Part shown: piece after piece, positions 6,795 to 56,605 of the stretch
Layout of the letters: each line of letters opens with the position of its first letter
Position numbering within the stretch: position 1 is the stretch's first letter
NCBI GenBank assembly: GCA_002269645.1
Contig: NIVC01000102.1
Span: forward strand, 329,950 to 393,949
Direction of reading: 5' to 3'
Length of the DNA stretch: 64,000 bases
DNA from: Macrostomum lignano
Taxonomy: Eukaryota
The notes under the pieces: model-generated
Told to the model about the DNA's origin: nothing
What the model saw: the letters and a program-made list of their open reading frames with translations, nothing else
The model's database searches: none
Translations under genes and position numbers: made by a program

Positions 6795-28098
<21,304 letters not shown>

Positions 28099-28279
28099 TT
28101 TTCCGGCTTTCTGCCTTCTTTTAGAAGAAGCAGAACTATAACTACAGCTGAAATTCTCACTAACTAATCAGCTCATGCTTGCTGGTTTCTGAGGGCGCAG
28201 TAGTACTCGATACATTAAAAAAAAGAAAATGGCCCTGTGTGTGTGTGGTGTGCCTGATAAACACTAATGAAGGGCCACC

Positions 28280-28287
28280 ATTGGCTG
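28280..28287 (-). promoter_or_regulatory. CCAAT box upstream of cassette A
   Basis: Sense-strand CAGCCAAT about 182 bp upstream of the ATG. Confidence 0.5.
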
Positions 28288-28454
28288 CTGCAAACCAATC
28301 CAATCTCTGGGAATCTTTCCTCAAATCATGGAAACTCTAAAGCTAGACATCTGGGAAGGAAGCAAAGGGGAAGTCGCAGAAATGTCGAAAATGTTAAACC
28401 CTAATTTCTAAGAAATTCCTAATTTATTGATAAAAGAGTGAGATTATAGATTCT

Positions 28455-29125
28455 AAGGTGAGACTGATAGACGCAGTGGTGAGACTGATAGATTCAGGGG
28501 TGAGACTGGTAGATGCAGGGTTGAGATTGATAGATGTAGGGTTGAGATTGATAGATGAAGGGTTAAGATTGATAGATGCAGGGTTGAGACTGATAGACGC
28601 AGTGGTGAGACTGATAGATGCAAGGTTGAGACTGGTAGATGTAGGGTTGAGATTGATAGATGCAGGGTTGAGATTGATAGATGCAGGGTTGAGATTGATA
28701 GATGCAGGATTGAGATTGATAGATGTAGGGTTGAGATTGATAGATGCAGGGTTGAGACTGATAGATTAGTTGTGAGACTAACCAATGCAGGTTTGAGACT
28801 ATTAGATGCAGGGATGAGACTGATAGACGCAGAGGCAAGACTGATGGACGCAGGGGCGAGACTGTTAGACGCAGAGGCAAGACTGATGGATGCAGGGATA
28901 ACACTGATAGATGCAGGGATGACACTGATGGATGCAGGGATAACACTGATAGATGCAGGGATAACACTGATAGATGCAGGGATGACACTGATGGATGCAG
29001 GGATAACACTGATAGATGCAGGGATGACACTGATGGATGCAGGGGTGAGACTGATGGATGCAGGGATAACACTGATAGATGCAGGGATGAGACTGATGGA
29101 TGCAGGGATGAGACTGATGGATGCA
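28455..29125 (+). repeat. 21-bp minisatellites (two related variants)
   Basis: Units gagattgatagatgcagggtt and acactgatagatgcagggata. Confidence 0.92.
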
Positions 29126-29597
29126 CAGTTTGGCTCCAGATTGTCTCTAATTCTCCTTAACCCATCCAACAGCCCATTGTGCTCTCAGCAAACACGCTGC
29201 CTTGACTTTTCAAAACTCCCTTGGCAAACCCGGGCATCCCTCGAGATCCCGACGCCTTCTTGCCAGCCTGCGCAGCATCCCATCAATTCTCCCTACACCC
29301 AAGTCAGGCCAGGCGCTTTGACAAGAAAAAAAACAGACTCAGGCAAGCTCTGCTGAGAGCATGGGCTTCTCCCTTTTGGGAATTGGACCTAAAAATTTCT
29401 GAATTATATTTGCCGTCATACCTGCGACATCCCATCTCCCCGCTACCCCAGTGAACGGTGAAAGATGCATTCATCTTAGCCAAGGGAGTTCCATTGTTAG
29501 ATTAAAGTGCTTCAACTGATGCATAGGGTTGACTTTTGTAATGCGTTTCTATGGTCAAATATTAGATATTTATACACCCTATGAAGTTGTATCTGAA

Positions 29598-30125
29598 GCA
29601 CCTGACTCTATTAATCTCAACTAATAATCTAGAAGTCTCACACCTGACTCTACCAATCTCAACTAATAATCTAGAAGTCTCACACCTGACTCTACCAATC
29701 TCAACTAATAATCTAGAAGTCTCACACCTGACTCTACCAATCTCAACTAATAATCTAGAAGTCTCACACCTGACTCTACCAATCTCAACTAATAATCTAG
29801 AAGTCTCACACCTGACTCTACCAATCTCAACTAATAATCTACAAGTCTCACACCTGACTCTACCAATCTCAACTAATAATCTACAAGTCTCACACCTGAT
29901 TCTATCAGTCTCCTAATTTAATCTAAAAGTCTCACACCTGACTCTATCAATCTCCTAATTTAATCTAAAAGTCTCACACATGACTCTACCAATCTCCTAA
30001 TTTAATCTAAAAGTCTCACACATGACTCTACCAATCTCAACTAATAATCTAGAAGTCTCACACCTGACTCTACCAATCTCAACTAATAATCTAGAAGTCT
30101 CACACCTGACTCCATCAATCTCAAC
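29598..30125 (+). repeat. 42-bp minisatellite
   Basis: Unit cacctgactctaccaatctcaactaataatctagaagtctca. Confidence 0.95.
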
Positions 30126-30619
30126 CATTTAATTGGCATGTCACTCGTCTGACCTCTGCATGCATCAATTCCTTCCTTTATCTTTTTAGAATATCTTTTT
30201 TCATTTATCAGAATAATATAATCAGAATAATTCTCTTTCAAGCAAAAGATTTTTCTTGACTTAGCAATGAAGATCCTCTTTAGAAAAAAATCTGACTTCT
30301 TAATCATGTTGAGCACGTTTCTCCTGAATCTTCAGCCTCTCATTACACGGCCCTTTTGAACGAACTCCCCTCAGACCCTTAGAATCGATATCTGCAAAAT
30401 ATTTCAGTTTTAGCACAGCCCGTCGTTGCACAAAGATTGAGAAGAAAAATATGTCACAAAGAAAGAAAGAAAAAGCCAACTGTGCATTTTCTGTTCATAA
30501 AGTACCAAATGAAGAAGATAATACTGCCCATTTCACGGAAAGCTCGTTTTGATCAGAGTCTTGAAATAAAATTTCGAATTTCATTTTGGTGTTACACTTT
30601 TCAAACTATAGTGAATTAT

Positions 30620-31800
30620 GTAAACTACAGTAAATTCTGTAATCTACAGTAAGTTCTGTAAACTACAGTAAGTTCTGTAAACTACAGTAAATTCTGTAAA
30701 CTACAGTAAATTCTGTAAACTACAGTAAATTCTATAAACTACAGTAAATTCTGTAAACTACAGTAAATTCTGTAAACTACAGTAAATTCTATAAACTACA
30801 GTAAATTCTGTAAACTACAGTAAATTCTGTAAACTACAGTAAATTCTGTAAACTACAGTAAGTTCTGTAAACTACAGTAAATTCTGTAAACTACAATAAA
30901 TTCTGTAAACTACAGTAAATTCTGTAAACTACAGTAAATTCTGTAAACTACAGTAAATTCTGTAAACTACAGTAAATTCTGTAAACTACAGTAAATTCTG
31001 TAAACTACAGTAAATTCTGTAAACTACAGTAAATTCTGTAAACTACAGTAAATTCAGTAAACTACAGTAAATTCTGTAAACTACAGTGAATTATGTAAAC
31101 TACAGTAAATTCTGTAAACTACAGTAAGTTCTGTAAACTACAGTAAGTTCTGTAAACTACAGTAAATTTTGTAAACTACAGTAAATTCTGTAAACTACAG
31201 TAAGTTCTGTAAACTACAGTAAATTCTGTAAACTACAGTAAATTCTGTAAACTACAGTAAATTCTGTAAACTACAGTAAATTCTGTAAACTAGGGTAAAT
31301 TCTGTAAACTACAGTAAATTCTGTAAACTACAGTAAATTCTGTAAACTACAGTAAATTCTGTAAACTACAGTAAATTCTGTAAACTACAGTAAATTCTGT
31401 AAACTACAGTAAATTCTGTAAACTACAGTAAATTCTGTAAACTAGGGTAAATTCTGTAAACTACAGTAAATTCTGTAAACTACAGTGAATTATGTAAACT
31501 ACAGTAAATTCTGTAAACTACAGTAAATTCTGTAAACTACAGTAAATTCTGTAAACTACAGTGAATTATGTAAACTACAGTAAATTCTGTAAACTACAGT
31601 AAATTCTGTAAACTACAGTAAATTCTATAAACTACAGTAAATTCTATAAACTACAGTAAGTTCTGTAAACTACAGTAAGTTCTGTAAACTACAGTAAGTT
31701 CTGTAAACTACAGTAAATTCTATAAACTACAGTAAATTCTGTAAACTTTAGTAGATTCGGTAAACTATAGTGAATTTAGTAAACAACAGTAAATTCTGAA
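30620..31800 (+). repeat. 19-bp minisatellite, about 1.2 kb, hairpin-prone unit
   Basis: Unit taaactacagtaaattctg; contains the inverted repeat CTGTA-AAC-TACAG across the unit junction. Confidence 0.97.
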
Positions 31801-32014
31801 AACTACAACAAATTATTTATACAGGGACAGTTTATCGTACTAGATATTTTCAGATTCTTTGCTGATTTTATTTCAATATTTTAAGTTCACTACTTAGGAG
31901 TAGACTAACTAGAAAATGTTCCCGCTTAAGAAAACATATTTTAGTAGAATATTTCTGCTCCACAAAGCCTCATTTCGATACATATCGGCGCCTTGCGAAA
32001 TCGATTTCTTTTAC

Positions 32015-32370
32015 CAGAATAATCTGTGCCAATTTTCTCGGTGAAAGCGGTGTGCAGGTCCTGATCAGAGAACCGGCCGCCGTAGGTGTCCATGAACTCA
32101 GCCTTCTTGCCCATGGCTTGCCATTCTTTGTTTAAATCCATCATTAGCAGGCTGCAGCCGTCCTTGGTATAGCCATAGTTCCACGAGTACAAGCCGAAGA
32201 ACCTGCTCCAGTTGTTCGTGATGAAGATTCGCTTCAGAATCGAGCGCATCAATTCGCCGCTATCGAAGCTGACTCGGGCGAAAATCTTGTTTCTATATTT
32301 GATTTTTTCTGGATCGCGGAATGTCGACTCAACTGAGCCGATGCTCACGACCGGCTTGTTCCAGATGGCA
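32015..32370 (-). CDS. rGC variable cassette B, exon 2
   Basis: CCGCAG acceptor (phase 2); AIWNKPVVSIG...IFARVS...NNWSRF...DGCSLL...EKIGTDYS; phase-1 GTAAAA donor at 32014. Confidence 0.8.
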
Positions 32371-32452
32371 CTGCGGGAGAATTGTCCATGAATTTCTTTT
32401 TTTAATTTTATTAACTGGCTTAGTGGCAAACAGTACAGATTAAACGATTTTT

Positions 32453-32490
32453 GGCCTGAGGAAGAGCCCCGAGGCTCGAAACCGGTAGCC
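32453..32490 (+). ncRNA. Minimal type-I hammerhead ribozyme, Penelope-like-element type, intact core
   Basis: GGC-CTGAGGA-A-GAGCC-ccga-GGCTC-GAAA-C-CG-G-TA-GCC: perfect 5-bp stem II, palindromic CCGG in stem III, GUA cleavage triplet, 3-bp stem I. Confidence 0.7.
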
Positions 32491-32679
32491 CATACTAAAT
32501 TAATTATTTTTTAAACACGCCGTGACCTCTCTTCTCTCTCTCTCTCTACCTCTCTCTCTCTCACTCTCTCTCTCTCGCTTGCTAAACAAGTAGAAATACC
32601 GACACTAAAAATATCAAACCTCATTTTAAAACATTATTAAATCTCAACCTATCAACCCATCAAATCTCACTCTACATCC

Positions 32680-33680
32680 CCATAAAGTCTCCCTCTACAA
32701 CCCCATAAAATCTCACTCTACTAACTCAATCAAATCTCGCTCTACTAACCCAATCAAATCTCACTCTACTAACTCAATCAAATCTCACTCTACTAGCCCA
32801 ATCAAATCTCACTCTACTAACTCAATCAAATCTCACTCTACTAGCCCAATCAAATCTCACTCTACTAACTCAATCAAATCTCACTCTACTAACTCAATCA
32901 AATCTCACTCTACTAACTCAATCAAATCTCACTCTACTAATTCAATCAAATCTCACTCTAATAACTCAATCAAATCTCATTCTACTAACTCAATCAAATC
33001 TCACTCTACTAACTCAATTAAATCTCACTCTACTAGCCCAATCAAATCTCACTCTACTAACTCAATCAAATCTCACTCTACTAACTCAATCAAATCTCAC
33101 TCTACTAACTCAATCAAATCTCACTCTACTAATTCAATCAAATCTCACTCTAATAACTCAATCAAATCTCATTCTACTAACTCAATCAAATCTCACTCTA
33201 CTAACTCAATCAAATCTCATTCTACTACCTCAATCAAATCTCATTCTACTACCTCACTCAAATCTCATTCTACTACCTCACTCAAATCTCATTCTACTAA
33301 CTCAATCAAATCTCACTCTACTAACTCAATCAAATCTCATTCTACTACCTCAATCAAATCTCATTCTACTACCTCAATCAAATCTCATTCTACTAACTCA
33401 ATCAAATCTCACTCTAATAACTCAATCAAATCTCATTCTACTAACTCAATCAAATCTCACTCTAATAACTCAATCAAATCTCACTCTACTAACTCGATCA
33501 AATCTCACTTTACTAACTCAATCAAATCTCGCTCTAATAACTCAATCAAATATCACTCTACTAACTCAATCAAATCTCATTCTACTACCTCAATCAAATC
33601 TCACTCTACTAACCCCATCAAATCTCACTCTACAACCCTATCAAATCTCACTCTACCGTCATCCATCAAATCTCACCTGA
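32680..33680 (+). repeat. 24-bp minisatellite, about 1 kb
   Basis: Unit actaactcaatcaaatctcactct. Confidence 0.95.
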
Positions 33681-34489
33681 CCACCCCATAAAAATTTGAG
33701 CTCTGCCATATGCAACTCCATCAGAACTCAGCCTGAAGTCTCACTCTGCATGTAAGTCTTCCTCACTCAAAAATAATTCTTGAACTGAATCAGTCAGAAA
33801 GCCCACTAATTCAGTAGGGCAACCGAAGCCGCACAATCGAGAATCTAGTTAATATTTTTTTGGCTAAACACTGCAAAGATTTCTTTTACTGGTTTGCATT
33901 TAAATCATTTACTGCCAGACTAAATGCTAATCCCCGTCTATAAAAGTGCTTTTTACTGATCTATATTTTAGACTAGAATAAATGACAGGGAAAAACACAC
34001 TAAGGCAACAGTACATGTCATGTCTGGGCCTATCTGCAGAACCAAAAATCCCTAATCTTATATCTTCTTGTATCTTATTCTTTATCATCTTACTGCCTGA
34101 AGAGCCTCAGCTCCCGTCCACTCCGCCTCTTCCTGGACCATCCATTTACTCAACTATCAGACAATATCCCCTGTCTCTTCATCCTTGCATTCGTATGGCA
34201 GGATGTAAATTTAATTAGCATAATTAATTCACGACCGGACCATCAATATACCAGCTTGCGTGCATTTTCCATTAATGGCTTGTATAGTAGAACATATGCT
34301 ATCATCAAACACTGAGAACCAACAGTCACAGTAAATAATAGTTGAGCTTGTCCAGATAACAGTGCAAAATATTACACTACCCTGCTATCTTAGGATTTTT
34401 AACTTGCAAGACAGCAGTTGGGAAAGAAAGGACAGCGTTTCAATATTCACGATACACAGCCGGCCAATTTCCCAGCCCTTCAATACGCC

Positions 34490-34860
34490 ACCACCCCAAC
34501 ACGCCAACCCCCCAACACGACAACCCCCAACACGACAACCCCCAACACGACAACCCCCAACACGCCAACCCCCAACACGATAACCCCCAACACGCCAACC
34601 CCCCAACACGATAACCCCCAACACGCCAACCCCCCAACACGACAACCCCCCAACACGACAACCCCCCAACACGACAACCCCCAACACGCCAACCCCCAAA
34701 CACACCAACCCCCAACAAACCACGCCCTAACAAACCAACTCCCCAGCTCAACAACCCTGGATTACAACCCCCCAAACAAGCCAACCGTAATAGACCAACC
34801 CCACAAAAACGCCAACTGCCCAACATGCCAACCCCCCAACACGCCAACCCATGACACTTT
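34490..34860 (+). repeat. 14-15-bp C-rich minisatellite
   Basis: Unit ccccaacacgacaa and variants. Confidence 0.88.
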
Positions 34861-35148
34861 AATCATTAGCCAGCAAATTTACCAAGCCCTGTCAAGCAAA
34901 CAGATTTTTTAACAAAAATAAAAAACAGATTTCTGTTTCATTTCAAGTCGTCAAGCAGAGAAGCTGAGAGCTCAAATTAATCATGAATTTAATGGATTCC
35001 TACGTTAAATTAACACTTGTTTGATGTAGGTAATTTTTCATACAAAAATTGGCACGCAGAGAAAAGTGCAAAAGCCTGGTTCTCTCTAGAAATTACCAGA
35101 TCCTAAGTCTTTGATAATAAAAATTGTAACACAGTAAGCAATTAAAAG

Positions 35149-35455
<307 letters not shown>

Positions 35456-35478
35456 AAAAGGTAGATAAACAGACTCAC

Positions 35479-35876
35479 TTGGAGTACTGCACCACCTGGC
35501 TGCAGCTCTCGGGACACGGCAGGCCAACAAAGCCGTCAACCCAGCCAGAATAATAGTACTGCATCGCAGGCACAGCTGCCAGGTTGGAGCAGGTGGACGC
35601 CTCAAAGCTGATGTTGATGCTGAACTGGTCTGCTAGGCCACGCCTCGTCAGCTCGGCGTTGATCAGGCTCTGGCTCGGCAGGATGTACCGCATGTCGAAC
35701 TGATAATTAGACTGATTGGGCAGCAGACACAGCAGGCGGTATGGCAGCGGCTGCTTCAACGCTGCCATCGAGGCCTGACTCTGGACGGCCTGGCGCCCCA
35801 GGCTAATTACTATAATTAGTTGCCATGCAGTCACGATTGACAACCTGAGCCTGTTGTCTGCTTGTAGATCTAGCAT
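35479..35876 (-). CDS. rGC variable cassette B, exon 1
   Basis: ATG 35876; hydrophobic LSIVTAWQLIIVISLG; YRLLCLLP...ASTCS...VDGFVGLPCPESC; phase-2 GTGAGT donor at 35478, in frame with 32370. Confidence 0.78.
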
Positions 35877-35986
35877 GAAGATTTTCTTTTTTTTTAATTT
35901 TCTTTTCAAACAAAAATTGTGACAGATGCTTCCAGCTGCTCAGATCGTCTTAAATAACGAGACTCTCTCCGTGTCGCGACTTGTCT

Positions 35987-35998
35987 TGATTGGCTGTG
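35987..35998 (-). promoter_or_regulatory. CCAAT box upstream of cassette B
   Basis: Sense CACAGCCAATCA about 111 bp upstream of the ATG; identical 12-mer upstream of cassette C. Confidence 0.55.
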
Positions 35999-36586: not shown

Positions 36587-36901
<315 letters not shown>

Positions 36902-39830: not shown

Positions 39831-40829
39831 TTTCACCCTCTCTTCGCTCACAATGTCTCCTATTCCTTATCGTTCTCTCACCCATGTTTTTATCCCAAAT
39901 ATGAATATTATAAAGATAAAAACACACTGTGCACTCATGTATAATACCCATAGCATGATGAAGATTCCCTGACCAGCTTAAGCAAGCAGAGATGCTGACC
40001 CAGCTTCATTTTCGCTCGCACTTTTCCTCTCACGATCCACAAACGGCTGTGTTCCCCCTTTTTGCGCTTTTGGTTAGTTGCCACTCAAGCAGGGGCTCTT
40101 TCTTTACTGGGATCAAATACCTGCTGACTGACTTTAACGAACCAAACGCTCAAACAGTGTAATGCTTGACTTCCTTCATTATTCAATCTGAAAAGCAGCA
40201 TATGGGCCGCATGTGCATCAGTGCAAGAGCTCATAGAAGTATGGAAAAGTACACTGTCATGTTTATTAAGTTCGTGATACATTTCGCGATTCCTACGCGA
40301 ATGAGTCATAAGAAGCTACGAGTAGAATGAGTTAATAGATGTAAAAAAGTAATAAAACATTCTTAAATGAGTCACAAGATGCTAAATTGAGTCATAGAAT
40401 ACTAGAATGAGTCATAAGATGCTACAATGAGTCATACGAATCTACCGGCTTGAATTTACCAGAAAGATGCATGCCTAACTTTTCCTATTTTTTGCCGCAG
40501 AGATCAGACAGAAGAAAATTGGAAAAGGCAACCTGTGCTCAAACATTGAGATCATAGCGAAATTTCGATCGATTTTATTTGCTCTCAAATTTTGTCTTGT
40601 TACCTTTGCATTCTTTTATTTCTTTTTTAGCAATGATTTTTTGAAAATTTTAGACGAATCCTAGCAATCCTACTTTAGGTAGAAATATAGGGACATTATT
40701 GGAGCAGAGCATCTCAGTGGTAAACGCGTCTGAATCTCGGGCCACGACAAGTGGTTTGAGTTCGTTGGTCGCAACAATCATTTAGGGCTTGTGCACGAAA
40801 ATTGGCCTCTCTTCTCCCTGTCCCCCTGT

Positions 40830-42135
<1,306 letters not shown>

Positions 42136-42774
42136 TTGTCTCCCTCTTACTGTCTCCCTCTCACTGTCTCCCTCTCAGTGTCTTCCCGTCTCCCTGTCTC
42201 TTTGTCTCCCTGTCCTACTCTCCACCCCTTCTTATGCTGCATCAACACTAATATATCTCAATCCCAATTTACCTTCTCATGTGCATCTTTATCAACCGCC
42301 CTCCTTCCTCCAGTCCCATCAATCTATTTTTCTGCACCCTTCATCTTTCCCATTTTTCATTTTTCTCCCGAAATCCTCAATCCATCGACGCACAGACCGC
42401 ACAGATAACAACCCCCGCTCTCCACTCCCCCCAGATCCGTTTGTTGCCAAAAGCATTGAGCGCCATCATCAAAAAGCTGTGTCTTTCGGGGGCCCAATTG
42501 CCTTCGGGTGTGAAAGCTGTTCGTGCAGCTATCATATAATCATAAATCAAAGCATGCAGCATTCCCCACCCAGCAGGCCTTGAGGACATTTTTCTTCTGA
42601 TCAGCTGCTGGGAGTCTGCGTGCATGATGCAGCTTCTCTGCTGTCAATCGATTCCATATGCTGGCCGGCATTGCTAAAATCGCTATTCATTTAGAGATTA
42701 AAGATCAACAGACAGATAGATGGATGGGTGGATATTCGGACGGGCTGTGAGCATCCTGGCGCAACACCCTGTGA

Positions 42775-43910
42775 GAATAGGAGACAGAGAGACAGGGAGA
42801 CAGGGAGACAGGCAGACAGGCAGACAGGGAGACAGGCAGACAGGGAGACAGGGAGACAGGCAGACAGGCAGACAGGGAGACAGGCAGACAGGGAGACAGG
42901 GAGACAAGGAGACAGGGAGACAGGGAGACAGGGAGACAGTTAGACAGGGAGACAGGCAGACAGGGAGACAGCCAGACAGGGAGACAGGGAGAGAGGGAGA
43001 CAGGGAGACAGGGAGACAGGGAGACAGGGAGACAGGCAGACAGGGAGACAGGGAGACAGGCAGACAGGGAGACATGGAGACAGGGAGAGAGAGAGAGACA
43101 GGCAGACAGGGAGACAGGGAAATAGGGAGACAGGCAGACAGGCAGACAGGCAGACAGGCAGACAGAGAGACAGCCAGACAGGGAGACAGGGAGACAGGGA
43201 GACACGGAGACAGGGAGATAGGCAGACAGGGAGACAGGCAGACAGGGAGACACGGAGACAGGGAGACAGGCAGACAGGGAGACACGGAGACAGGGAGACA
43301 GGCAGACAGGGAGTCACGGAGACAGGGAGACAGGCAGACAGGGAGACAGGCAGACAGGGAGTCACGGAGACAGGGAGACAGGCAGACAGGGAGACAGGCA
43401 GACAGGGAGACACGGAGACAAGGAGACAGGCAGACATGGAGACAGGGAGACAGGGAGACAGGGAGACACGGAGACAAGGAGACATGCAGACAGGGAGACA
43501 AGGAGACAGGGAGACAGGCAGACAGGGAGACAGGGAGACAGGGAGACAGGGAGAGAAGGGAGACAGGCAGACAGGGAGACAGGCAGACAGGGAGACACGG
43601 AGACAAGGAGACAGGCAGACACGGAGACAGGGAGACAGGGAGACAGGGAGACAGGCAGACAGGGAGACACGGAGACAGGGAGACAGGTAGACAGGGAGAC
43701 AGGCAGACAGGCAGACAGGGAGACACGGAGACAGGGAGACAGGCAGACAGGGAGACAGGGAGACACGGAGACAGGCAGACAGGCAGACAGGGAGACACGG
43801 AGGCAGGGAGACAGGCAGACAGGGAGACACGGAGACAAGGAGACAGGCAGACAGGGAGACAGAGAGACAGGGAGACAGGGAGACAGGGAGACAGGGAGAC
43901 AGGGAGAGAA
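42775..43910 (+). repeat. 8-bp minisatellite, about 1.1 kb
   Basis: Units gggagaca/ggcagaca. Confidence 0.95.
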
Positions 43911-45169
43911 GGGAGATTTGTAACCTTAAATCCTAGGTAAGCCCCAATAAGGTTACCGGTAACATTAAGCTAGGACACTGCTAACATGATAATTCTACAA
44001 TCAGAAACGCGAACTCAACAACAGGCGCACCCCAGCAGTTGCCTTAAAAGGAGCTGCTAACGAGAATTATGAAGACTCTTGTCAGAGCTTTGCGCGAAAC
44101 ACTGAGAGGGCCGGTGGGGCGGTGTGACTGAGAGCAAAGAGCCAAGCAGATTATAACAAAGATACAGGGCAGACTGTTGTCGCCAGCCGCTCCCAGCCAA
44201 GAAAACTTGCTTAGCCTTACAGCATGAAGCCTCAAAGGACTGTAACTGACTAACTGACTTGATCAGCTTTCAACAGCTTTTTTGATACAGTTTCTGTGAA
44301 AAAGCAGACTCTGTACATAAAAGTACATATTAGGGCCACCTGCCATGTTGCCAAATTTCATTAGTAAAATTGTTATCTGATACTTATTTATATCATTAGT
44401 GAAAACAAATATTAAAGTAAAATCTCTTTTAGTAAAAATAAACAAAACTAAAGTGAATCGATAGAATCGTTCTAAAGGTCGCGAGCTCGAGTCCCGATTG
44501 AGACTAATAATCTTTTCCGAGTTACAAAGACACCCCAAAAAGGTGGCAGAAACTGTCAAGTTTTATTCCCAGTAACACACTTTTAGTATTGTTTGAAATT
44601 TACCTCATCACTTACTTGAAATTTAGTAGAATTTTTACCGTACGATATGTATCGAAAAGACGCTTCCGTAATGGGAAAAAAGTATGCGTAGACATTATAT
44701 CTAGCTAGTGAATAACCAAGGAGCGTCCTAATTGTGACCGCAGTTACATCTAAATGCTTTCACGGCTCTTCTTAATGTACTCATCGATTTTTTTTATTCA
44801 AAATCCCAAAGGAATTCCAAAAGTTTTATGCTGGAACTTCTTCTGTCCTGGTGCCTCGATAATTAGGGCGCACGCACTCGGGCCGGGGTTGCAAGAGTTT
44901 CCTCAGCGGCCCGAATCCGCTCAACCGCAACGGCTTTTTTCAAGGTTCTCCGAAGCCTCTCCAGCGATTTTAAGTCCATCAGTGGGACAGAGAAATCTCC
45001 CATCTTTTTTTAATATCCACTACCGCCTCCATTATATTCCATGAGCGGTGCTTCTTCTAGGTAGGAGAAATTTCTATTTCATATAATTTACCCGCTCGAG
45101 TGAATAGAAGTACAGAATAGAAAGTCAATTCAGATTACCCAAGATAGATATACTCAAGATAGAATTATC

Positions 45170-49000: not shown

Positions 49001-49603
49001 TTTGACGTCCTCTAGTTCTAATATGGTCCTTCCGGAGTCCTCTACTCCCCCCTATGATCCTTCTACGGTGCTAAAGCATTCACCTAATGGTTCCAGTCGA
49101 GGTTCTCTAACATTTCCAAGAAAGCACACCAGTATTTCTGCTCTCAAGGCATCGCAGTACAGAAGCAATTTGCAATGAGAAAAACATCCCAGACTGCGCA
49201 CCCACAGATGAAGGCTTGGGGCGGGGATGAGCTCAAGGCTGAGAAAGGCAGCCTGCTAATCTCTCCAGCTTTGGAGTTCCCGGAAACTTTTGCTAGATTA
49301 AAAAGATACAAACCAACCCCCTCCCTTTCCCCGGAGCACGCGGGTTCCTTTCCCCAGGGCAATTGGCACGCAAAAAATGCAGTATGCTTTTTTCTCTTAT
49401 TATCAGTCCTGCCCAACCCTCCTCCCGTGCTGCATTTTGCCGAATTCTGCCCGGAATTCTGTCAGGCAGGGTAGCGGAGTCAATTTGCTTGCCTGGCATT
49501 GACTGCTCATCGCTTGACAGCAAACAGAAAGAGAAATTGCAGTTGATAAATCTTTTGCTGCCTTTAGAGAGGATTGTTTGAGTTCTGCGTTTGTTAGCGC
49601 TGC

Positions 49604-50224
<621 letters not shown>

Positions 50225-50908
50225 GTGATTTAATCGTGTCAAAAAAGCATTGACAAAAATCGGGAAGTTCACTGCTCAGGGCAAAGTGGATCCCAGTGAC
50301 TTCCCTACCCGTGTGTCAGTCAAGTTTGCTTAGTGGGGCCGAGTCATGCAGCCTGGAAGAGTCACTCCCAGAGCTACAGAAAAGGAAAAGTGGTCGGGAA
50401 GCGCCGGTGCTTAGAAATCCTTTGCAGGAAATTCATATTTTTCGTCATTTTTCTACCCTTTTAGCTTGGAACGTGTGCCAGAGCATATTTTCCACTCTGA
50501 GCAGCAGGCAATGCAAAGTGTTTTGCAAGGCATTCCAAGGGGTAAAAATTAATGGGGAAATATGATTGACCCAATCGACTGTCCTCAAGAGTCGATCAGC
50601 TCCCTTGCCCTTCTCCTGTTGCCAACTTGTCAGCGGTTGGCAGTCAGGACCCACCGGTTTTAATTTTCAAGACTTGGAATTTCTTTTTCAACGTTTTGTT
50701 CCCTGCGCAGAATAAATAGTTGTTCAAATAAAGAAGATAGATGACAGGGGTGTGAGTGAGACGCTCCAGCATCAGGCCACGACATGCAGCTTCTCTGCTG
50801 CCAAGCCTTCATCACACTGTGTGCTCACTTTCATGTTTATCTTGCTTTCCATCTGGTTTGCTTAGAACTTAACCAATTCTTTACCTGCCTTCCTACATGA
50901 CCGCTGGT

Positions 50909-50970
<62 letters not shown>

Positions 50971-51164
50971 AGCTCCACTGCGCGTTAGCGACTGCGGGGA
51001 CTTCTTTCTAGTGCAAAGTCCATATAAATTCGATTTTCTCGCTTTGAGAAATTCTTCGATTGTTAATAAAAAGATTGGCTTTGAATTCAGTGAGTGTACA
51101 TGACTGACGGGGTGAAAGGTTGGCTGTCAGCTTGAGTTGCGACAGCGTCACAGATTACCTCTGC

Positions 51165-51600
51165 GATGTCCTTTCTCTTCTCTCCCCTCTCCTACCTGGT
51201 ATCTCTCTCCTGTCTCTCACTCTCACCTCTCCCCTCTCCCATCTCTCCACTCTCTGGTCTCTCCTCTCCAATCTCAATCCTCTCTCTCTCATCTCTCTGA
51301 TTTTCCAATCTCTCTCCTCCCATCCCTCTCCCCTCCCATCTCTCTCCTCTCCCATCTCTCTCCTGTCTCTCACTCTCCCCTCTCCACTCTCCCATCTCTC
51401 CACTCTCTGATCTTTCCTCTCCCATCTTAATCCTCTCTCACATCTCTCTCCTCTCAAATCTCAATCCTCTCTCCCCTCTCCCCTCTCTCTTCTCCCATCT
51501 CTCTCCTCTCCCATCTCTCTCTTTCCCTCTACCTCTCACCCTCTCCCTTTCACCCTCTCCCATCTCTCTCCCCTCCTTCTCTCCGTCCCCTCTCACTTTC
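51165..51600 (+). repeat. CT-rich low-complexity tract
   Basis: ctcccatctctc-type units. Confidence 0.85.
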
Positions 51601-53074
51601 TAATCCCTTCCCGATCAATTACACACCAGCCCCATTGCACTGTCAGTCTGTCTTACAGCACTCTCCAATTTCACCCCTAAAAACATTTTTCCATTCCTCA
51701 GTCGTCAGACTTATCTATATCTACCCAGCTCCCGATCCCAGCTTCCATGCAAGCTTGGCCATCTCTCTCTCTATCAGTAGGTCACTGATACGAGGCTTCT
51801 AGTTACTCTGCGCACCGCAGCCGCACTCTGGCAATCCATCTTCAATGGTTCCTTTTTATCTCCAGTCCACCGCGCCCCTAGCTATAGCATCTGCTATCTA
51901 CTGGTGGCATTTTAAACGTAGAAAAATTCATGGATTGTCAAAAATTCGTCCAGCGGAACCACACAACCAGCCAGTCAATTTGTTTTCTAGCCAAACCTGA
52001 AAAATATTCTTTTTTTTAACTTCATTTTCTCCAGCACTGGAAAATCAGATCAGGCCACTTGAGAGCTACGAAGATGTGAAGGTCAAGTTTTTAGGTTCAA
52101 TAAAAATTTTACCCCACCTAAAAGTACTTTTATGAAAACCATGCCCTCGCGAAAGTCGAGTTGGGACTAAATCTGATTTAATTTTGTATTAATTAAATCT
52201 GCAATAGTTGTTATCTTTGATTCGGAGGAATATTCTATAATTAAATTGTTTTTTTTTGTTTTGCATTAATTAAATTTGTTACCATTTTAAATTTTGTTTG
52301 TGAGGAACATTCTAGAAAGATCGTTAGTACTAAATCTGTTTTATTTTATTGTTTAAATTAAATTCTAAATTCTTTCAAAGCTAAATTATTAGGCATCTAA
52401 TGGTAGGAAGTATAGTTAAATCTGTTTTGAGTTTGTTTTAAATAAATGCGTACTTTTTTGAAACATCGTTCGGCAAATAAGCTTTAAAATATGGCACCAT
52501 ATTAATAAACAAGAAGTACTTGATAAAACAATTTAATAAAAATGGCTCTCAAGTGACTTCCTATAGAAAGCTTAGCTCATATAGATCTTAAACAGTGTTT
52601 ACCACAATCCAATTTTGGCGCGAATTTAAACATAATTTTATAACGTCACATCGACCATAAATATCTAGCATAGAAGGTTTACTTTTTATAGTGCTTGTAT
52701 GAGTATTTATACATGCAATATATCCATACTGTTTATACTGCCATGCACATACTAAATTGCCATGCCTTTAAAATAGTGGGGCCAAACTGCTAAATTACCT
52801 AATTACCCCCCCCCGCCAGCTAATTGCTACGGTCGAGCCAAATTAGCCGCAAAAAGGAAGGAAAGCTCTCACAATGCCTGCTGACTGCTTTAAGGATGTG
52901 ACAGTTAACCGACCACCCCCCCCCATCCCCTAGAGACTAATAATAAGCCATCGCTAGGGCGAAATTACATATTATATCCTTCTGCAAATCATCTTCTGCT
53001 TTTTGCTAACGTCACTGACTGCCTGTCTTTCTATTTTAGACCTCTTTATCTAAGCTCTGATTTGGCTCTTTTCT

Positions 53075-54296
53075 AGCCTCTACCTGTCTTCGCCCTCTTC
53101 TCTACCTGTCTTCGCCCTCTTCTCTACCTGTCTTCGCCCTCTTCTCTACCTGTCTTCGCCTTCTTCTCCACCTGTCTTCGCCTTCTTCTCTACGTGTCTT
53201 CGCCTTCTTCTCTACCTGTCTTCGCCCTCTTCTCTACCTGTCTTCGCCCTCTTCTCTACCTGTCTTCGCCCTCTTCTCTACCTGTCTTCGCCTTCTTCTC
53301 TACCTGTCTTCGCCCTCTTCTCTACCTGTCTTCGCCTTCTTCTCTACCTGTCTTCGCCCTCTTCTCTACCTGTCTTCGCCTTCTTCTCTACCTGTCTTTT
53401 CCTTCTTCTCTACCTGTCTTCGCCTTCTTCTCTACCTGTCTTCGCCTTCTTCTCTACCTGTCTTCGCCTTCTTCTCTACCTGTCTTCGCCCCCTTCTCTA
53501 CCTGTCTTTTCCTTCTTCTCTACGTGTCTTCGCCTTCTTCTCTACGTGTCTTCGCCTTCTTCTCTACCTGTCTTCGCCCTCTTCTCTACCTGTCTTCGCC
53601 TTCTTCTCTACCTGTCTTCGCCTTCTTCTCTACCTGTCTTCGCCTTCTTCTCTACCTGTCTTCGCCTTCTTCTCTACCTGTCTTCGCCCCCTTCTCTACC
53701 TGTCTTTTCCTTCTTCTCTACCTGCCTTCGCCTTCTTTTCTACCTGTCTTCGCCTTCTTCTCTACCTGTCTTCGCCTTCTTCTCTACCTGTCTTCGCCCC
53801 CTTCTCTACCTGTCTTTTCCTTCTTCTCTACCTGTCTTCGCCTTCTTCTCTACCTGTCTTCGCCCCCTTCTCTACCTGTCTTTTCCTTCTTCTCTACCTG
53901 CCTTCGCCTTCTTTTCTACCAGTCTTCGCCTTCTTCTCTACCTGTCTTCGCCTTCTTCTCTACCTGTCTTCGCCTTCTTCTCTACCTGTCTTCGCCTTCT
54001 TCTCTACCTGTCTTCGCCCCCTTCTCTACCTGTCTTTTCCTTCTTCTCTACGTGTCTTCGCCTTCTTCTCTACGTGTCTTCGCCTTCTTCTCTACGTGTC
54101 TTCTCCCTCTTCTCTACCAGTCTTCGCCCTCTTCTCTACCGGTCTTTGCCCTCTTCTCTACCTGTCTTCGCCCTCTTCTCTACCTGTCTTCGCCCTCTTC
54201 TCTACCGGTCTTCGCCCTCTTCTCTACGTGTCTTCGCCTTCTTCTCTACGTGTCTTCGCCTTCTTCTCTACCTGTCTTCGCCTTCTTCTCTACCTG
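53075..54296 (+). repeat. 22-bp minisatellite, about 1.2 kb
   Basis: Unit tctacctgtcttcgcc(c/t)tcttc. Confidence 0.96.
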
Positions 54297-55242
54297 CAGG
54301 CACGCACGCATAGACACGCTCACACGGGTGCACAGCGGCTCCTGACTTTCTAATCGTCCGGCATGTACACTTTCTGTGCCATGGGGGTTCACCCAAGGGT
54401 GTGCGTGTGAATCGCACGACAACCCACTTGGTCGATTTTCGAGTGCACCGAAATCCCAGTGCACCCAAAGGGTCACCCACCGACCATGCGTTCTTTTATC
54501 AAATTGTCCATACGAAAATTAAATCATAAATTGTTAATGACAACCTTCACATGCCTCTCTTCCACGTAGCTATATATTTTTTATCTTCACCGGGTTATAG
54601 CTTTAGCCGCAAACGGTACGCCATTTAAATCGAATCTACTAATCAAATCATATCGAGCTCTCGTTGACTGCCAAACCCCGTTCAAAATTACCGATTAAGC
54701 TGTCAAGAATGACTTCAAACACACGCGAGGCTAGCTACACAGCTCACCCTCTACCCTCCATGCCCTCCCCCCAGGGGTAACCCAGCCAGGAGACATGCTG
54801 TCTACTTCTCCCTTCCTGTGACTGACCCACGTCTTGGCCTGGCAGAAAAATCCCCGCGTCTCTCCGCGGGCAATTGAAGATAAAAGGGCATTTTGGTAAT
54901 CGCACTAAGCATACAAGAATGATATTTCTTGCATGTTGCCTCAACTACTAAAACTACATGTTAGCTACGGCCGCTTTTGAGACGCCAAATGGCTGGATGT
55001 GAAATACAGAATTAGAAACGAGTTGATTGACTGATTGATCGATCGGATACACATAGGGAGAACAGGGCGCCCCGCCCAGAAAATTGATCCTTTGTCATTT
55101 TCAAATAATTTTGTCATTTTCTTTTGACCATCGCATGCATGTCAGTGTCGATTAGTGCTTATTTGATAAGAATAATTAATAATCTTTTTATTAGAGATTT
55201 GTCTCCTAGGACAATTCTTTGACGGGGAAAAATACTTTTGCA

Positions 55243-55560
55243 AATTCCAGATTGCAGATCCCAGATTGCAGATCCCAGATTGCAGATCCCAGATTGCAGA
55301 TCCCAGATTGCAGATCCCAGATTGCAGATCCCAGATTGCAGATCCCAGATTGCAGATCCCAGATTGCAGATCCCAGATTGCAGATCCCAGATTGCAGATC
55401 CCAGATTGCAGATCCCAGATTGCAGATCCCAGATTGCAGATCCCAGATTGCAGATCCCAGATTGCAGATCCCAGATTGCAGATCCCAGATTGCAGATCCC
55501 AGATTGCAGATCCCAGATTGCAGATCCCAGATTGCAGATCCCAGATTGCAGATCCCAGAT
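55243..55560 (+). repeat. Perfect 14-bp minisatellite just downstream of the cassette C donor
   Basis: Unit cagatcccagattg, about 22 copies. Confidence 0.97.
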
Positions 55561-55636
55561 TTTGTGCTTAAACTTCGAGCCTCATCTCAAAGAATCCCAA
55601 GAAGGCATGTCTGCCGGCAACCGCCTCCCCACTCAC

Positions 55637-56405
55637 CAGCCAGTTTATTCCCAACTCTTTCCAGCAGGATCTTCCGGTACAGCTCGTCCGTAATGTTCAG
55701 CTTCAAGTCTTCATCAATTTGAGAATCCAGCGTCATTGACTCGTACATGTAGGACATGTTTTGCTTGAAATTGAATTCAAAGACTTTCTCTACGAACTGG
55801 CATTGGAACAGGTCTAGGAAGTAGCTGGGTCTGCCGTCAGTAGCCACGACACTTTTTCGTCGATTGATGAAGAATAGCCGCTTCCAGCCTCCCAGGTTGG
55901 TCATGACTGACTGCATCGTGTCGAAGATGCCTTTGCCCGTGGTGCCAACCCTGATCAAGTCGTACCTGTCGAGGCTGCCAGACAGGGCACCGGTGGAGAT
56001 GAAAGTGTCGATGCTGTGCTTGTAGTACAGAAACACATTGTTGATGGAATATGAGCACAGCAAGCCAGTGATGAGGCGCGGCTGCACTCCAGTTGAGGAC
56101 TCGTGCTGCTTGCACTTCAGGGCCATCAGCTCCCTGATTGAAGCCACGTGTTCGCAAGGGAAGTCCTCCGGCTGCTTGACCAGCTGGATTGAGTGGCCGA
56201 GAGCTTGAAGAACAGCGGGATGCTGCATTGCAACATCGAATGTAGCCTGCAGCAGTTCGAGCGGACTGACCACTTGGTGACCAACTGAGTTGTACTTTGT
56301 CGCCAACAGCAGGACCGTGATGTTTTTCTTTGTTGAAGCGGTGACAGCGGCGGACAGACACAGGCACAAAAGCAAGATTGCTGCGGCGCTTTTAGAAGCA
56401 AGCAT
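55637..56405 (-). CDS. rGC variable cassette C, single 769-nt exon (256 aa + 1 nt)
   Basis: Signal peptide MLASKSAAAILLLCLCLSAAVTA; NITVLLL...FDVAM...PCEH...ITGLLCSY...FISTGA...DLIRVG...GGWKRLFFI...FQCQF...RVGNKLA; phase-1 GTGAGT donor at 55636. Confidence 0.85.
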
Positions 56406-56593
56406 TGCGCTTAGCGATACTGTCTGTAGTTTTTGAATTTCTTAGATGCTTTCGGGAGACAACTACCAGCCGTATGCAGCATTATACACGACAGAAGTGT
56501 TTCAGCCTATTGATAACGTGTTTCGCTGCATTTTATGGAGTTGGTAAGAGAGAAGAGGAGAGAGGAGGCAGAGGCAGAGGCAGAGGCGCTGAC

Positions 56594-56605
56594 TGATTGG
56601 CTGTG
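56594..56605 (-). promoter_or_regulatory. CCAAT box upstream of cassette C
   Basis: Sense CACAGCCAATCA about 189 bp upstream of the ATG. Confidence 0.55.

What the first reader, a model, noticed from the sequence alone, without database searches (positions are those of the whole stretch)
28280..56605. Same CCAAT element in the same orientation upstream of all three ATG-bearing cassettes
Seen: sense-strand CAGCCAAT lies about 182 bp (A, 28280-28287), 111 bp (B, 35987-35998) and 189 bp (C, 56594-56605) upstream of the start codons. B and C share the exact 12-mer CACAGCCAATCA although the surrounding DNA is unrelated. I noticed no other copy by eye, but did not scan exhaustively. Established: RRCCAATCA is the NF-Y consensus, and protocadherin variable exons each carry a conserved promoter element. 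Inference: each cassette has its own promoter, so isoform choice would be promoter choice rather than exon skipping.
Basis: partly seen in the sequence, partly recalled or inferred. Interest (0 to 1): 0.72.

Follow-up and report, generated by a model that had tools for sequence, protein, structure and literature searches.

The report
CCAAT-box promoters of alternative receptor cassettes
Three copies of a classic promoter motif (the CCAAT box) sit just upstream of three alternative first-exon cassettes of a flatworm receptor guanylate cyclase gene. The same motif recurs at the matching cassettes of sister genes, so each cassette very probably has its own ordinary promoter.

Summary
CAGCCAAT occurs exactly three times in the window, all on the minus strand, 182, 111 and 189 bp upstream of three ATGs. 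The window is Macrostomum lignano scaffold NIVC01000102.1.

**The gene.** It is a natriuretic-peptide-receptor/gcy-28-like receptor guanylate cyclase (BOX15_Mlig000254g3). Cassettes A (2 exons), B (2 exons) and C (1 exon) each encode a Met, a signal peptide and about 250 aa of the ligand-binding domain. All three end in phase 1 and join one common acceptor at 16952. A fourth cassette (D) starts outside the window.

**Motif count versus position.** The count of the 8-mer alone is not enriched. Its position is.
- In three diverged paralogous loci with the same D-C-B-A order, GCCAAT lies within 300 bp of the ATG in 6 of 8 cassette first exons (P about 4e-4).
- Counting the window, the figure is 9 of 11.
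- The other two cassettes have the motif at about -420.
- GCCAAT is the top shared k-mer.

**Orientation.** It is not conserved in the paralogs, which fits a DNA element recognised by a protein such as NF-Y.

**Limits.** Separate promoters are well supported but unproven, because there are no TSS data. Spliced-leader trans-splicing is not excluded. Promoter choice also cannot be the whole mechanism, because exons A2 and B2 have acceptors that upstream transcripts must skip.

This is a new member of a known kind.

The parts
28278..28287 (-). CCAAT box of cassette A. It reads CAGCCAATGG and matches RRCCAATSR. It lies 182-186 bp upstream of the A start codon.
   Evidence: invariant in the homeologous copies L001 and L007
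35987..35998 (-). CCAAT box of cassette B. It reads CACAGCCAATCA and lies 111-117 bp upstream of the B start codon.
   Evidence: invariant in L001 and L007
56594..56605 (-). CCAAT box of cassette C. It reads CACAGCCAATCA and lies 189-195 bp upstream of the C start codon.
   Evidence: the pentamer is invariant in L001 and L007. L001 has G to A at the base before CCAAT, which still fits RR.
35949..35956 (-). TATA-like element TATTTAAG. It lies about 35 bp downstream of box B and 80 bp upstream of the B ATG.
   Evidence: invariant in the three homeologous copies. Its function is inferred.
56530..56537 (-). TATA-like element CATAAAAT. It lies about 60 bp downstream of box C and 132 bp upstream of the C ATG.
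   Evidence: invariant in the three copies. A related-species C transcript carries TATTTATATAA at -118. Its function is inferred.
28213..28224 (-). T/A-rich stretch TTTTTTTTAATG about 55 bp downstream of box A. It is only a weak TATA candidate.
27780..28098 (-). Cassette A exon 1. It carries the ATG, a signal peptide and the start of the ANF-receptor domain. Its donor is GTGAGT in phase 1.
25967..26389 (-). Cassette A exon 2. Its acceptor and its donor (GTAAGA) are both in phase 1.
   Evidence: matches P0001 at 100%
35479..35876 (-). Cassette B exon 1. It carries the ATG and a hydrophobic N-terminus. Its donor is GTGAGT in phase 2.
32015..32370 (-). Cassette B exon 2. Its acceptor is in phase 2 and its donor (GTAAAA) in phase 1.
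   Evidence: the B1-B2 junction is the same as in UniProt model P0122
55637..56405 (-). Cassette C, a single exon of 256 codons plus 1 nt. It carries the ATG and a signal peptide. Its donor is GTGAGT in phase 1.
   Evidence: 99.6% identical to residues 1-256 of P0002. The window itself is the locus of P0135, a 1172-aa member of the same 90%-identity cluster, annotated as C plus constant. An RNA contig from a related species shows C spliced to c1.
61111..61529 (-). Cassette D exon 2. It has no ATG. Its acceptor is in phase 2 and its donor (GTGAGT) in phase 1. Exon 1 of D was not found in the window or in the 2.4 kb beyond it.
   Evidence: homologous to residues 131-268 of paralog protein P0007
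16841..16952 (-). First common exon c1. Its phase-1 acceptor receives all cassettes. It encodes (V/L/F)[36 protein letters not shown].
   Evidence: this exon boundary is conserved in mollusc homologues
6795..15827 (-). Constant exons c2-c9: 15827-15265, 14660-13912, 12959-12791, 10264-10106, 8757-8297, 7869-7626, 7164-6974 and 6884-6795 (stop). An optional 12-nt microexon lies at 12082-12093. Together they encode the rest of the ligand-binding domain, the transmembrane segment, the kinase-homology domain and the cyclase domain.

Best explanation
**What the motifs are.** The three CAGCCAAT motifs are genuine proximal-promoter CCAAT boxes of the NF-Y type (RRCCAATSR). They belong to three separate promoters.

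**What the promoters drive.** Each drives one alternative 5' cassette (A, B or C) of a single receptor guanylate cyclase gene of Macrostomum lignano. The gene is BOX15_Mlig000254g3 and is natriuretic-peptide-receptor/gcy-28-like.

**What a cassette encodes.** Each encodes its own start codon, a signal peptide and the N-terminal two-thirds (about 250 aa) of the extracellular ANF-receptor-type ligand-binding domain.

**Proposed mechanism.**
1. A CCAAT-binding factor, most likely NF-Y, binds about 40-65 bp upstream of a TATA-like element. It helps fix initiation some 50-130 nt upstream of the cassette's ATG.
2. The transcript that starts there carries that cassette's phase-1 donor.
3. That donor is spliced to the shared acceptor of exon c1 at 16952.
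4. The result is receptors with different ligand-binding halves on an identical transmembrane, kinase-homology and cyclase body.

**Shown here.** The motif positions, the cassette and constant-exon structure with compatible phases, and the conservation of array and motif in paralogs.

**Inferred.** NF-Y binding, the TSS positions, and promoter choice as the main selector of isoform.

**An added requirement.** Promoter choice must be supplemented by skipping of the internal exons B2 and A2 in transcripts that start further upstream.
For: **Anatomy.**
- Three ORFs of 1159, 1163 and 1168 aa are obtained with canonical GT-AG sites when A, B or C is joined to c1.
- Pfam finds ANF_receptor, a kinase domain and a cyclase domain.

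**Independent annotations.**
- UniProt model P0001 is A plus the constant exons.
- GenBank model P0002 is C plus the constant exons.
- The window is the locus of P0135, a member of P0002's 90%-identity cluster.

**RNA evidence.** Logan contig L005, from a related species, is spliced C to c1 to c2.

**Conservation of the array.** Paralog loci L002 and L003 have the order D-C-B-A-constant. L004 has D, A and the constant exons.

**Conservation of the motif.**
- GCCAAT, on either strand, lies at -260 to -100 from the ATG in 9 of 11 cassette first exons. Background probability is 0.064 per window, the binomial tail is 8.6e-10, and 0 of 20000 random-position sets reach it.
- Under a composition-matched Markov null, P = 1.9e-6 for all 11 and 3.6e-4 for the 8 paralog promoters alone.
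- The two exceptions carry ATTGGCT at -439 and -415.
- An unbiased k-mer scan ranks GCCAAT and AGCCAAT first.
- All 9 promoters of the three homeologous copies keep the pentamer and the TATA-like elements.

**Orientation.** Both orientations occur in the paralogs. That fits a factor reading double-stranded DNA, not an RNA signal.

**Literature.**
- The NF-Y site is RRCCAATSR, typically -60 to -100 from the TSS, and planarians have NF-Y subunits (PMC11802806).
- C. elegans gcy-28.c and gcy-28.d have different ATGs, separately cloned promoters with different expression, and a common 3' end (PMC9249223, PMC3842693).
Against: - No transcription-start data (RAMPAGE, CAGE or 5' RACE) could be reached with these tools, so the TSS positions are guesses from TATA-like elements.
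- Cassette A has only a weak T/A-rich stretch, and most paralog promoters lack a recognisable TATA.
- M. lignano trans-splices 30-39% of its genes (PMC5730564, PMC8629364). The reported trans-acceptor motif YTNCAG occurs between the putative TATA and the ATG of A and of C (read), so the mature 5' ends could be spliced-leader sites.
- RNA contig L005 extends upstream of its own TATA-like element. That fits read-through or pre-mRNA from an upstream promoter.
- No full-length B-type product is annotated. B appears only as a truncated stand-alone model, P0122.
- NF-Y binding is untested. NFI/CTF also recognises GCCAA half-sites.
- One mollusc cassette (Lottia, L008) has no CCAAT within 600 bp of its ATG.
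- The divergence among the homeologous copies (4-9% variable columns) is too low to show constraint on the motif itself.
Confidence: 0.7

Rival explanations
1. One shared upstream promoter, for example that of cassette D or beyond, makes a long precursor. The cassette is then chosen post-transcriptionally, either by spliced-leader trans-splicing just upstream of each ATG or by cis-splicing from a common non-coding leader exon. The CCAAT motifs would then be intronic elements with some other role, such as an enhancer, an insulator or a nucleosome-positioning signal.
For: [quoted passage not shown]
- YTNCAG-type acceptors lie upstream of the A ATG (about -53) and the C ATG (about -22).
- RNA contig L005 reaches upstream of its TATA-like element.
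- No TSS data are available here.
Against: - The best-conserved upstream feature across 11 diverged cassette 5' regions is a classic promoter motif at promoter-like distance.
- The YTNCAG upstream of C is destroyed in homeolog L007, and B has none.
- L005 carries 153 nt of 5' UTR with no spliced leader.
- The C. elegans gcy-28 isoforms have separately active promoters (PMC9249223).
- Trans-splicing of a cassette's own outron would in any case be compatible with separate promoters.
Confidence: 0.15
2. The motifs are promoter elements, but they are read by a factor other than NF-Y, for example NFI/CTF (GCCAA half-site) or C/EBP.
For: - The enriched core is (A/G)GCCAAT, which contains an NFI half-site GCCAA.
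- CCAAT elements were historically assigned to NF-Y, C/EBP and NFI/CTF (PMC11802806).
Against: - The T of CCAAT is invariant in all 12 listed sites. The following base is C or G in 9 of the 11 main sites, and the two preceding bases are purines in all. That is the asymmetric NF-Y logo RRCCAATSR (PMC11802806).
- No palindromic TTGGC(N5)GCCAA arrangement is present at the three window sites.
Confidence: 0.1
3. Chance: a common pentamer happens to sit upstream of three ATGs, and the reader picked the 8-mer after the fact.
For: - The 8-mer count in the window is not above expectation: 3 against 2.08, with 37 of 100 shuffles reaching 3.
- CCAAT/ATTGG occurs 109 times in the window.
Against: - Only 1.2% of random window triples share any 8-mer.
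- Three of the 4 RRCCAATSR sites in the window are these.
- The out-of-sample test on paralog promoters gives 6 of 8, P = 3.6e-4.
- GCCAAT is the top k-mer in an unbiased scan.
Confidence: 0.02
4. The cassettes are remnants of separate, truncated tandem genes or pseudogenes, as the UniProt stand-alone model of cassette B suggests, and not alternative 5' ends of one gene.
For: - UniProt models P0122, P0137 and P0128 treat cassette B as a 249-271 aa stand-alone protein that reads into the intron.
- No B-plus-constant product is annotated.
Against: - All cassette-terminal donors (A2, B2, C, D2) are GT sites in phase 1, which matches the single c1 acceptor.
- Open reading frames, splice sites and cassette order are conserved in paralogs whose constant regions are only 66-76% identical.
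- Only one set of transmembrane, kinase and cyclase exons exists in the window.
- RefSeq isoforms of mollusc and nemertean homologues differ in the same first 240 aa or so and are then identical.
Confidence: 0.03

Closest known systems
NF-Y-bound CCAAT box of RNA polymerase II proximal promoters
   Same: - The CCAAT pentamer is invariant.
- The flanks fit the asymmetric logo RRCCAATSR at all three window sites.
- The box lies a few tens of bp upstream of TATA-like elements.
- It occurs in either orientation across the paralogs.
- Flatworms possess NF-Y subunits (PMC11802806).
   Different: Binding and the distance to the TSS (-60 to -100) are untested here. The distances known here are to the ATG only: 106-245 bp in nine cases and about 420 bp in two.
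C. elegans gcy-28 (receptor guanylate cyclase of the same NPR1-like group), isoforms gcy-28.c and gcy-28.d
   Same: - It has the same protein architecture.
- Its isoforms start at different ATGs and share the 3' end.
[quoted passage not shown]
- It is therefore experimental precedent for promoter-selected N-termini in this receptor group.
   Different: I did not verify how much of the ligand-binding domain differs between the gcy-28 isoforms, nor whether their promoters contain CCAAT boxes. The flatworm array has at least four cassettes, two of which have two exons.
Clustered protocadherins and UGT1A (variable first exons with constant exons)
   Same: A tandem array of variable 5' units, each with its own start codon and its own upstream conserved motif, is spliced to shared downstream exons. 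Choice of 5' unit changes the extracellular or substrate-binding part only. (From general knowledge.)
   Different: - Pcdh and UGT1A variable units are single exons without 3' splice sites, so promoter choice alone dictates splicing. Here A and B have second exons with acceptors.
- The Pcdh conserved sequence element is a different motif, not a CCAAT box.
- There are only about 4 cassettes here.
- Stochastic choice is not implied.
Chelicerate shortened Dscam (sDscam) 5' cassette arrays
   Same: Multi-exon variable 5' cassettes are selected by alternative promoters and joined to constant exons (PMC9258826).
   Different: sDscam cassette selection is additionally governed by docking-site and selector RNA pairing. 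My searches for such pairing found nothing here. The protein family and the number of cassettes also differ.

Membership tests
NF-Y-type CCAAT box | Invariant CCAAT pentamer | tested here: met
   Present at all three window sites. Kept in all 9 promoters of the three homeologous copies. Present within 450 bp of the ATG at 11 of 11 paralog-set cassettes.
NF-Y-type CCAAT box | Extended asymmetric consensus RRCCAATSR (PMC11802806) | tested here: met
   The sites read AGCCAATGG, AGCCAATCA and AGCCAATCA. Only 4 such sites exist in the window on both strands. In the paralog set, 8 of 11 promoters have a full match at -260 to -100.
NF-Y-type CCAAT box | Position about -60 to -100 from the transcription start site | not testable with these tools
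   The TSS is unknown. The boxes lie about 35-60 bp upstream of TATA-like elements in B and C, which would put them near -65 to -95 if initiation occurs about 30 bp after the TATA. That is an inference.
NF-Y-type CCAAT box | Bound by the NF-YA/B/C trimer, with promoter activity lost on CCAAT mutation | not testable with these tools
   Needs EMSA, ChIP or a reporter assay.
Variable-5'-cassette / constant-exon gene (Pcdh, UGT1A, sDscam type) | Tandem array of alternative 5' units, each with its own ATG, joined in frame to shared exons | tested here: met
Variable-5'-cassette / constant-exon gene (Pcdh, UGT1A, sDscam type) | Each unit has its own promoter | tested here: inconclusive
   A conserved promoter motif lies upstream of each unit, but there are no TSS or reporter data.
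Variable-5'-cassette / constant-exon gene (Pcdh, UGT1A type specifically) | Variable units are single exons lacking 3' splice sites, so the cap-proximal donor is the only one used | tested here: not met
   Cassettes A and B each have a second exon with a canonical acceptor. Only C is a single exon. This resembles sDscam multi-exon cassettes more closely (PMC9258826).
Receptor (membrane) guanylate cyclase, NPR1/gcy-28-like | ANF_receptor ectodomain, a single transmembrane segment, a kinase-homology domain and a class III cyclase domain | tested here: met
   Pfam hits on the exons. Full-length homologues carry PF01094, PF07714 and PF00211.
SL trans-spliced 5' end (M. lignano) | Unpaired 3' splice site (YTNCAG) near the 5' end that receives the 35-nt spliced leader | tested here: inconclusive
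   The motif is present upstream of the A and C ATGs, absent in B, and lost in homeolog L007 C (motif from PMC8629364). No SL-containing reads could be examined.

The most novel reading that the evidence does not exclude
The window holds one copy of an ancient array of alternative 5' cassettes selected by their own promoters. The order D-C-B-A predates the duplications that gave at least four paralogous loci in M. lignano. The array swaps the N-terminal two-thirds of the ligand-binding domain of an NPR/gcy-28-type receptor guanylate cyclase.

The same 'first 240 aa or so differ, the rest is identical' isoform pattern appears in RefSeq models of bivalves, gastropods and a nemertean. I found no description of it in the searchable literature.

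If each cassette confers a different ligand specificity and is expressed in different cells from its own NF-Y-box promoter, this would be a protocadherin/UGT1A-like diversification mechanism for a peptide-hormone receptor across Spiralia.
Probability: 0.45. Interest if true: 0.6.

Novelty: new member of a known kind. Interest (0 to 1): 0.4.

Why it matters
A CCAAT box upstream of a first exon is textbook, so the motif alone is ordinary. Its value is as a marker. It supports the view that this flatworm receptor guanylate cyclase is built like gcy-28, UGT1A or the clustered protocadherins: several promoter-equipped 5' cassettes encode different ligand-binding halves on one signalling body.

That gives a concrete, testable handle on how a single receptor gene could respond to different ligands in different cells, in an animal where transgenesis exists. 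The handles are cassette-specific promoters of 1-2 kb or less with a defined motif to mutate.

The work also corrects database models that split cassette B off as a separate protein or fuse cassettes D and A. It further shows that the same isoform pattern is annotated, apparently without comment, in many spiralian genomes.

Tried and rejected
1. **Count enrichment of the 8-mer in the window.** It is not significant. The argument rests on position and on the paralogs.
2. **Constraint from the two homeologous copies (L001, L007).** Divergence of 4-9% is too low to show selection on the motif. They show only that nothing is broken.
3. **Docking-site and selector RNA pairing that could enforce mutually exclusive cassette use, as in sDscam or Dscam.**
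   - RNAduplex was run between the 250 nt after each cassette donor and the 250 nt before c1. Z-scores ranged from -1.7 to +2.6.
   - Exact 10-mer complementarity to the last intron gave only scattered or repeat-derived hits.
   - The first attempt timed out.
   - Pairing is not excluded, because the search was crude.
4. **Exon 1 of cassette D.** tblastn did not find it in the window or in the additional 2.4 kb of L006.
5. **Cross-phylum test of the motif.**
   - The oyster isoforms were not on record.
   - The Haliotis gene spans 320 kb and its DNA was not returned.
   - The Lottia locus L008 shows a single-exon cassette with no CCAAT within 600 bp of the ATG and no second cassette within 10 kb. 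With n = 1 and an unknown TSS this is uninformative.
6. **Transcript 5' ends from public assemblies.** Only one spliced RNA contig was found (L005, from a related species). It ends 153 nt upstream of the ATG, short of where a CCAAT box would be, and includes its own TATA-like element, so it does not fix the TSS.
7. **Literature searches for a described rGC cassette array.** They returned nothing specific.
8. **A control gene.** The neighbouring DEG/ENaC-like gene's first coding exon has no CCAAT within 500 bp, so the motif is not simply upstream of every ATG exon (n = 1).

Full report
**Observation**

CAGCCAAT occurs exactly three times in the window, counting both strands. All three are on the minus strand, at 28280-28287, 35989-35996 and 56596-56603. 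The 12-mer CACAGCCAATCA occurs at 35987-35998 and 56594-56605, and no shuffle reproduces that.

Reading the minus strand places ATGs at 28098, 35876 and 56405.

The 8-mer count is unremarkable: 2.08 expected, and 37 of 100 shuffles reach 3. The bare pentamer is common, with 109 copies. What is unusual is the placement.
- Only 1.2% of random triples of 250-nt windows from this repeat-rich sequence share any 8-mer.
- The full NF-Y consensus RRCCAATSR occurs only four times on both strands, and three of those are these sites.
- Apart from the motif, the three upstream regions are unrelated.

**What the surrounding gene is**

The minus strand encodes a receptor guanylate cyclase. Pfam finds ANF_receptor, a kinase-homology domain and a cyclase domain on the larger ORF pieces.

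I built a gene model by hand from the sequence. It has nine constant exons, from c1 at 16952-16841 to c9 at 6884-6795. Three alternative 5' cassettes precede them:

| Cassette | Exons (window, minus strand) |
|---|---|
| A | 28098-27780 and 26389-25967 |
| B | 35876-35479 and 32370-32015 |
| C | 56405-55637 |

Each cassette begins with a Met and a hydrophobic signal-like segment. Each ends at a GT donor in phase 1 that fits the phase-1 acceptor of c1. The resulting open reading frames are 1159, 1163 and 1168 aa.

A fourth cassette is represented by an ATG-less second exon, D2, at 61529-61111, also with a phase-1 donor. Its first exon was not found in the window or in the 2.4 kb beyond it.

**Identity**

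The best protein matches are Macrostomum lignano guanylate cyclases. The window is 100% identical to GenBank scaffold NIVC01000102.1 of assembly Mlig_3_7. The gene is BOX15_Mlig000254g3.

Two independent annotations chose different cassettes for the same constant exons. UniProt A0A1I8HYF3 (P0001) is A plus constant. The GenBank models (P0002, and P0135 of the same 90%-identity cluster at the window's own locus) are C plus constant.

Cassette B exists in databases only as a truncated stand-alone model that reads into the intron (P0122). Another model fuses D and A (P0123).

A spliced RNA contig from a public run (L005, SRR28338163) comes from a related species. It is 84-87% identical in c1 and c2 and shows C joined directly to c1 and c2.

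**The test that matters: paralogs**

M. lignano has two further near-identical copies of this locus (L001 and L007, 94-98% identical in the 700-nt cassette upstream regions compared) and at least three diverged paralogous loci (L002, L003, L004). The constant regions of the paralogs are 66-76% identical in protein.

tblastn shows the same cassette order D-C-B-A-constant in L002 and L003, and D-A-constant in L004. All have ATG-plus-signal-peptide first exons. The array therefore predates these duplications.

The upstream DNA of the paralogs is not alignable with that of the window, so any shared motif there is informative. Scanning upstream of each ATG gave the following for the main GCCAAT site of each promoter:

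| Locus | Cassette | Site | Position from ATG | Orientation |
|---|---|---|---|---|
| L002 | A | GGCCAATCAG | -181 | sense |
| L002 | B | AGCCAATCC | -174 | sense |
| L002 | C | AGCCAATGAGG | -203 | antisense |
| L003 | A | CAGCCAATCAG | -245 | sense |
| L003 | B | AGCCAATAG | -163 | antisense |
| L003 | C | AGCCAATTG | -439 | antisense |
| L004 | D | GGCCAATGG | -106 | antisense |
| L004 | A | AGCCAATGT | -415 | antisense |

L003 A also carries a second site, AACCAATGG, at -199 (sense).

Counting the window once, GCCAAT on either strand lies at -260 to -100 in 9 of 11 independent promoters.
- Background probability is 0.064 per window. The binomial tail is 8.6e-10, and 0 of 20000 random-position sets reach it.
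- Under a composition-matched first-order Markov null, P = 1.9e-6.
- For the eight paralog promoters alone, which is a true out-of-sample test, the result is 6 of 8 and P = 3.6e-4.
- An unbiased scan of all 6- to 8-mers ranks GCCAAT, AGCCAAT and CAGCCAAT first.

In the three homeologous copies, all nine promoters keep the pentamer and the TATA-like elements. The single change is G to A just before CCAAT in L001 C, which still fits RR.

**Interpretation**

The sites fit the asymmetric NF-Y logo RRCCAATSR. NF-Y boxes are typically at -60 to -100 from the TSS, and flatworms have NF-Y subunits (PMC11802806).

In B and C a TATA-like element follows:
- B: TATTTAAG at 35956-35949, about 35 bp downstream of the box.
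- C: CATAAAAT at 56537-56530, about 60 bp downstream of the box.

If transcription starts about 30 bp after these elements, the boxes would fall in the canonical range. That step is inferred. Cassette A has only a weak T/A-rich stretch.

The motif occurs in both orientations among the paralogs. That argues for a factor reading double-stranded DNA and against an RNA-level splicing signal.

The closest functional precedent is C. elegans gcy-28, a homologue in the same receptor group. Its .c and .d isoforms have different ATGs and a shared 3' end. [quoted passage not shown]

**Limits and rivals**

No TSS data were reachable. M. lignano trans-splices 30-39% of its genes, and the reported acceptor motif is YTNCAG (PMC5730564, PMC8629364). 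Such hexamers lie upstream of the A and C ATGs. The one upstream of C is lost in homeolog L007, and B has none.

L005 has 153 nt of 5' UTR with no spliced leader, but it extends past its own TATA-like element, so it may include pre-mRNA.

A single-promoter model with post-transcriptional choice therefore cannot be excluded, and I give it about 0.15. Chance and 'separate truncated genes' are effectively excluded. NFI or another factor in place of NF-Y remains possible, at about 0.1.

**Promoter choice cannot be the whole story**

A2 and B2 have canonical acceptors. A transcript that starts at C must therefore skip both, and C-to-A2 would be in frame because both are phase 1. This differs from Pcdh and UGT1A, whose variable units are single exons. 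It resembles the multi-exon cassettes of chelicerate sDscam, where docking-site and selector RNA pairing helps selection (PMC9258826). My crude searches for such pairing found nothing.

**Wider context**

RefSeq isoforms of NPR1-like genes were compared within Mytilus (two species), Crassostrea, Ostrea, Mercenaria, Mya, Argopecten, Haliotis and the nemertean Lineus. They are 10-50% identical over roughly the first 240 aa and then 100% identical.

The c1 exon boundary is conserved in molluscs. The cassette architecture therefore appears widespread in Spiralia. I found no paper describing it in the searchable library.

A cross-phylum test of the CCAAT motif was not possible. The gene ranges were too long or the isoforms were not on record, and the one Lottia cassette examined was negative.

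**Verdict**

- The motif is best read as an NF-Y-type CCAAT box marking a separate promoter for each cassette (confidence about 0.7).
- As a finding it is a new member of a known kind.
- The more interesting object is the conserved cassette array itself.

Noticed in passing
window 61111-61529 (-): A fourth cassette (D) is represented only by its second exon, which has intact splice sites and a phase-1 donor. Its ATG-bearing first exon is not in the window or in the next 2.4 kb of the scaffold. In paralog L004 the D1-D2 intron is 3.5 kb, and D1 has an antisense GGCCAAT at -106.
   Followed up: partly
window 25967-26389 and 32015-32370 (-): The second exons of cassettes A and B have normal acceptors. 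Splicing of the C or D2 donor (phase 1) to the A2 acceptor (phase 1) would be in frame. Something must therefore prevent chimeric C-A2 or D-A2 products. No docking-site/selector complementarity was found.
   Followed up: partly
window 12082-12093 (-): A 12-nt microexon (GACAGTTCTATG, flanked by AG and GT) adds the residues RQFY, with N changed to D at the junction, in the kinase-homology domain. It is included in the GenBank model (P0002) and skipped in the UniProt model (P0001).
   Followed up: partly
window about 18560-21290 (-): A truncated LTR retrotransposon lies inside the 9-kb A2-c1 intron. It has gag/protease and integrase ORFs, and direct repeats at 18565-18861 and 20933-21283 that translate alike.
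   Followed up: no
window 56770-57730, 28450-29170, 35100-35470, 21900-23330 and 40790-43940: Large mini- and microsatellite arrays are present. Two of them lie immediately upstream of promoters: a 20-bp unit about 170 bp upstream of box C, and an array about 170 bp upstream of box A. They cause the extreme strand skews and account for most intron-length differences between the homeologous copies.
   Followed up: no
loci L001, L006 (= window) and L007: Three near-identical copies of the whole gene lie on different scaffolds. The gene spans are 66.9, 49.6 and 57.2 kb, and identity in the 700-nt cassette upstream regions compared is 94-98%. This is consistent with the duplicated M. lignano genome. 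All three are annotated as cassette C plus the constant exons.
   Followed up: partly
proteins P0122, P0137, P0128 and P0123 (UniProt models): There are annotation artefacts. Cassette B is modelled as a stand-alone 249-271 aa protein that reads into its downstream intron. One paralog model fuses cassettes D and A in series.
   Followed up: partly
proteins P0009-P0063: RefSeq isoforms of NPR1-like genes in bivalves, Haliotis and Lineus differ only in the first 240 aa or so. The Haliotis rubra gene spans 320 kb. This suggests large cassette arrays in molluscs.
   Followed up: partly
window about 276-665 (-), ATG near 530: The first coding exon of a neighbouring gene has a DEG/ENaC-like N-terminus. 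A TATAAAA lies about 140 bp upstream, and there is no CCAAT within 500 bp. Just upstream, at about 860-1580 (-), is an ORF fragment that I took on sight for part of a mobile element; it was not scanned.
   Followed up: no
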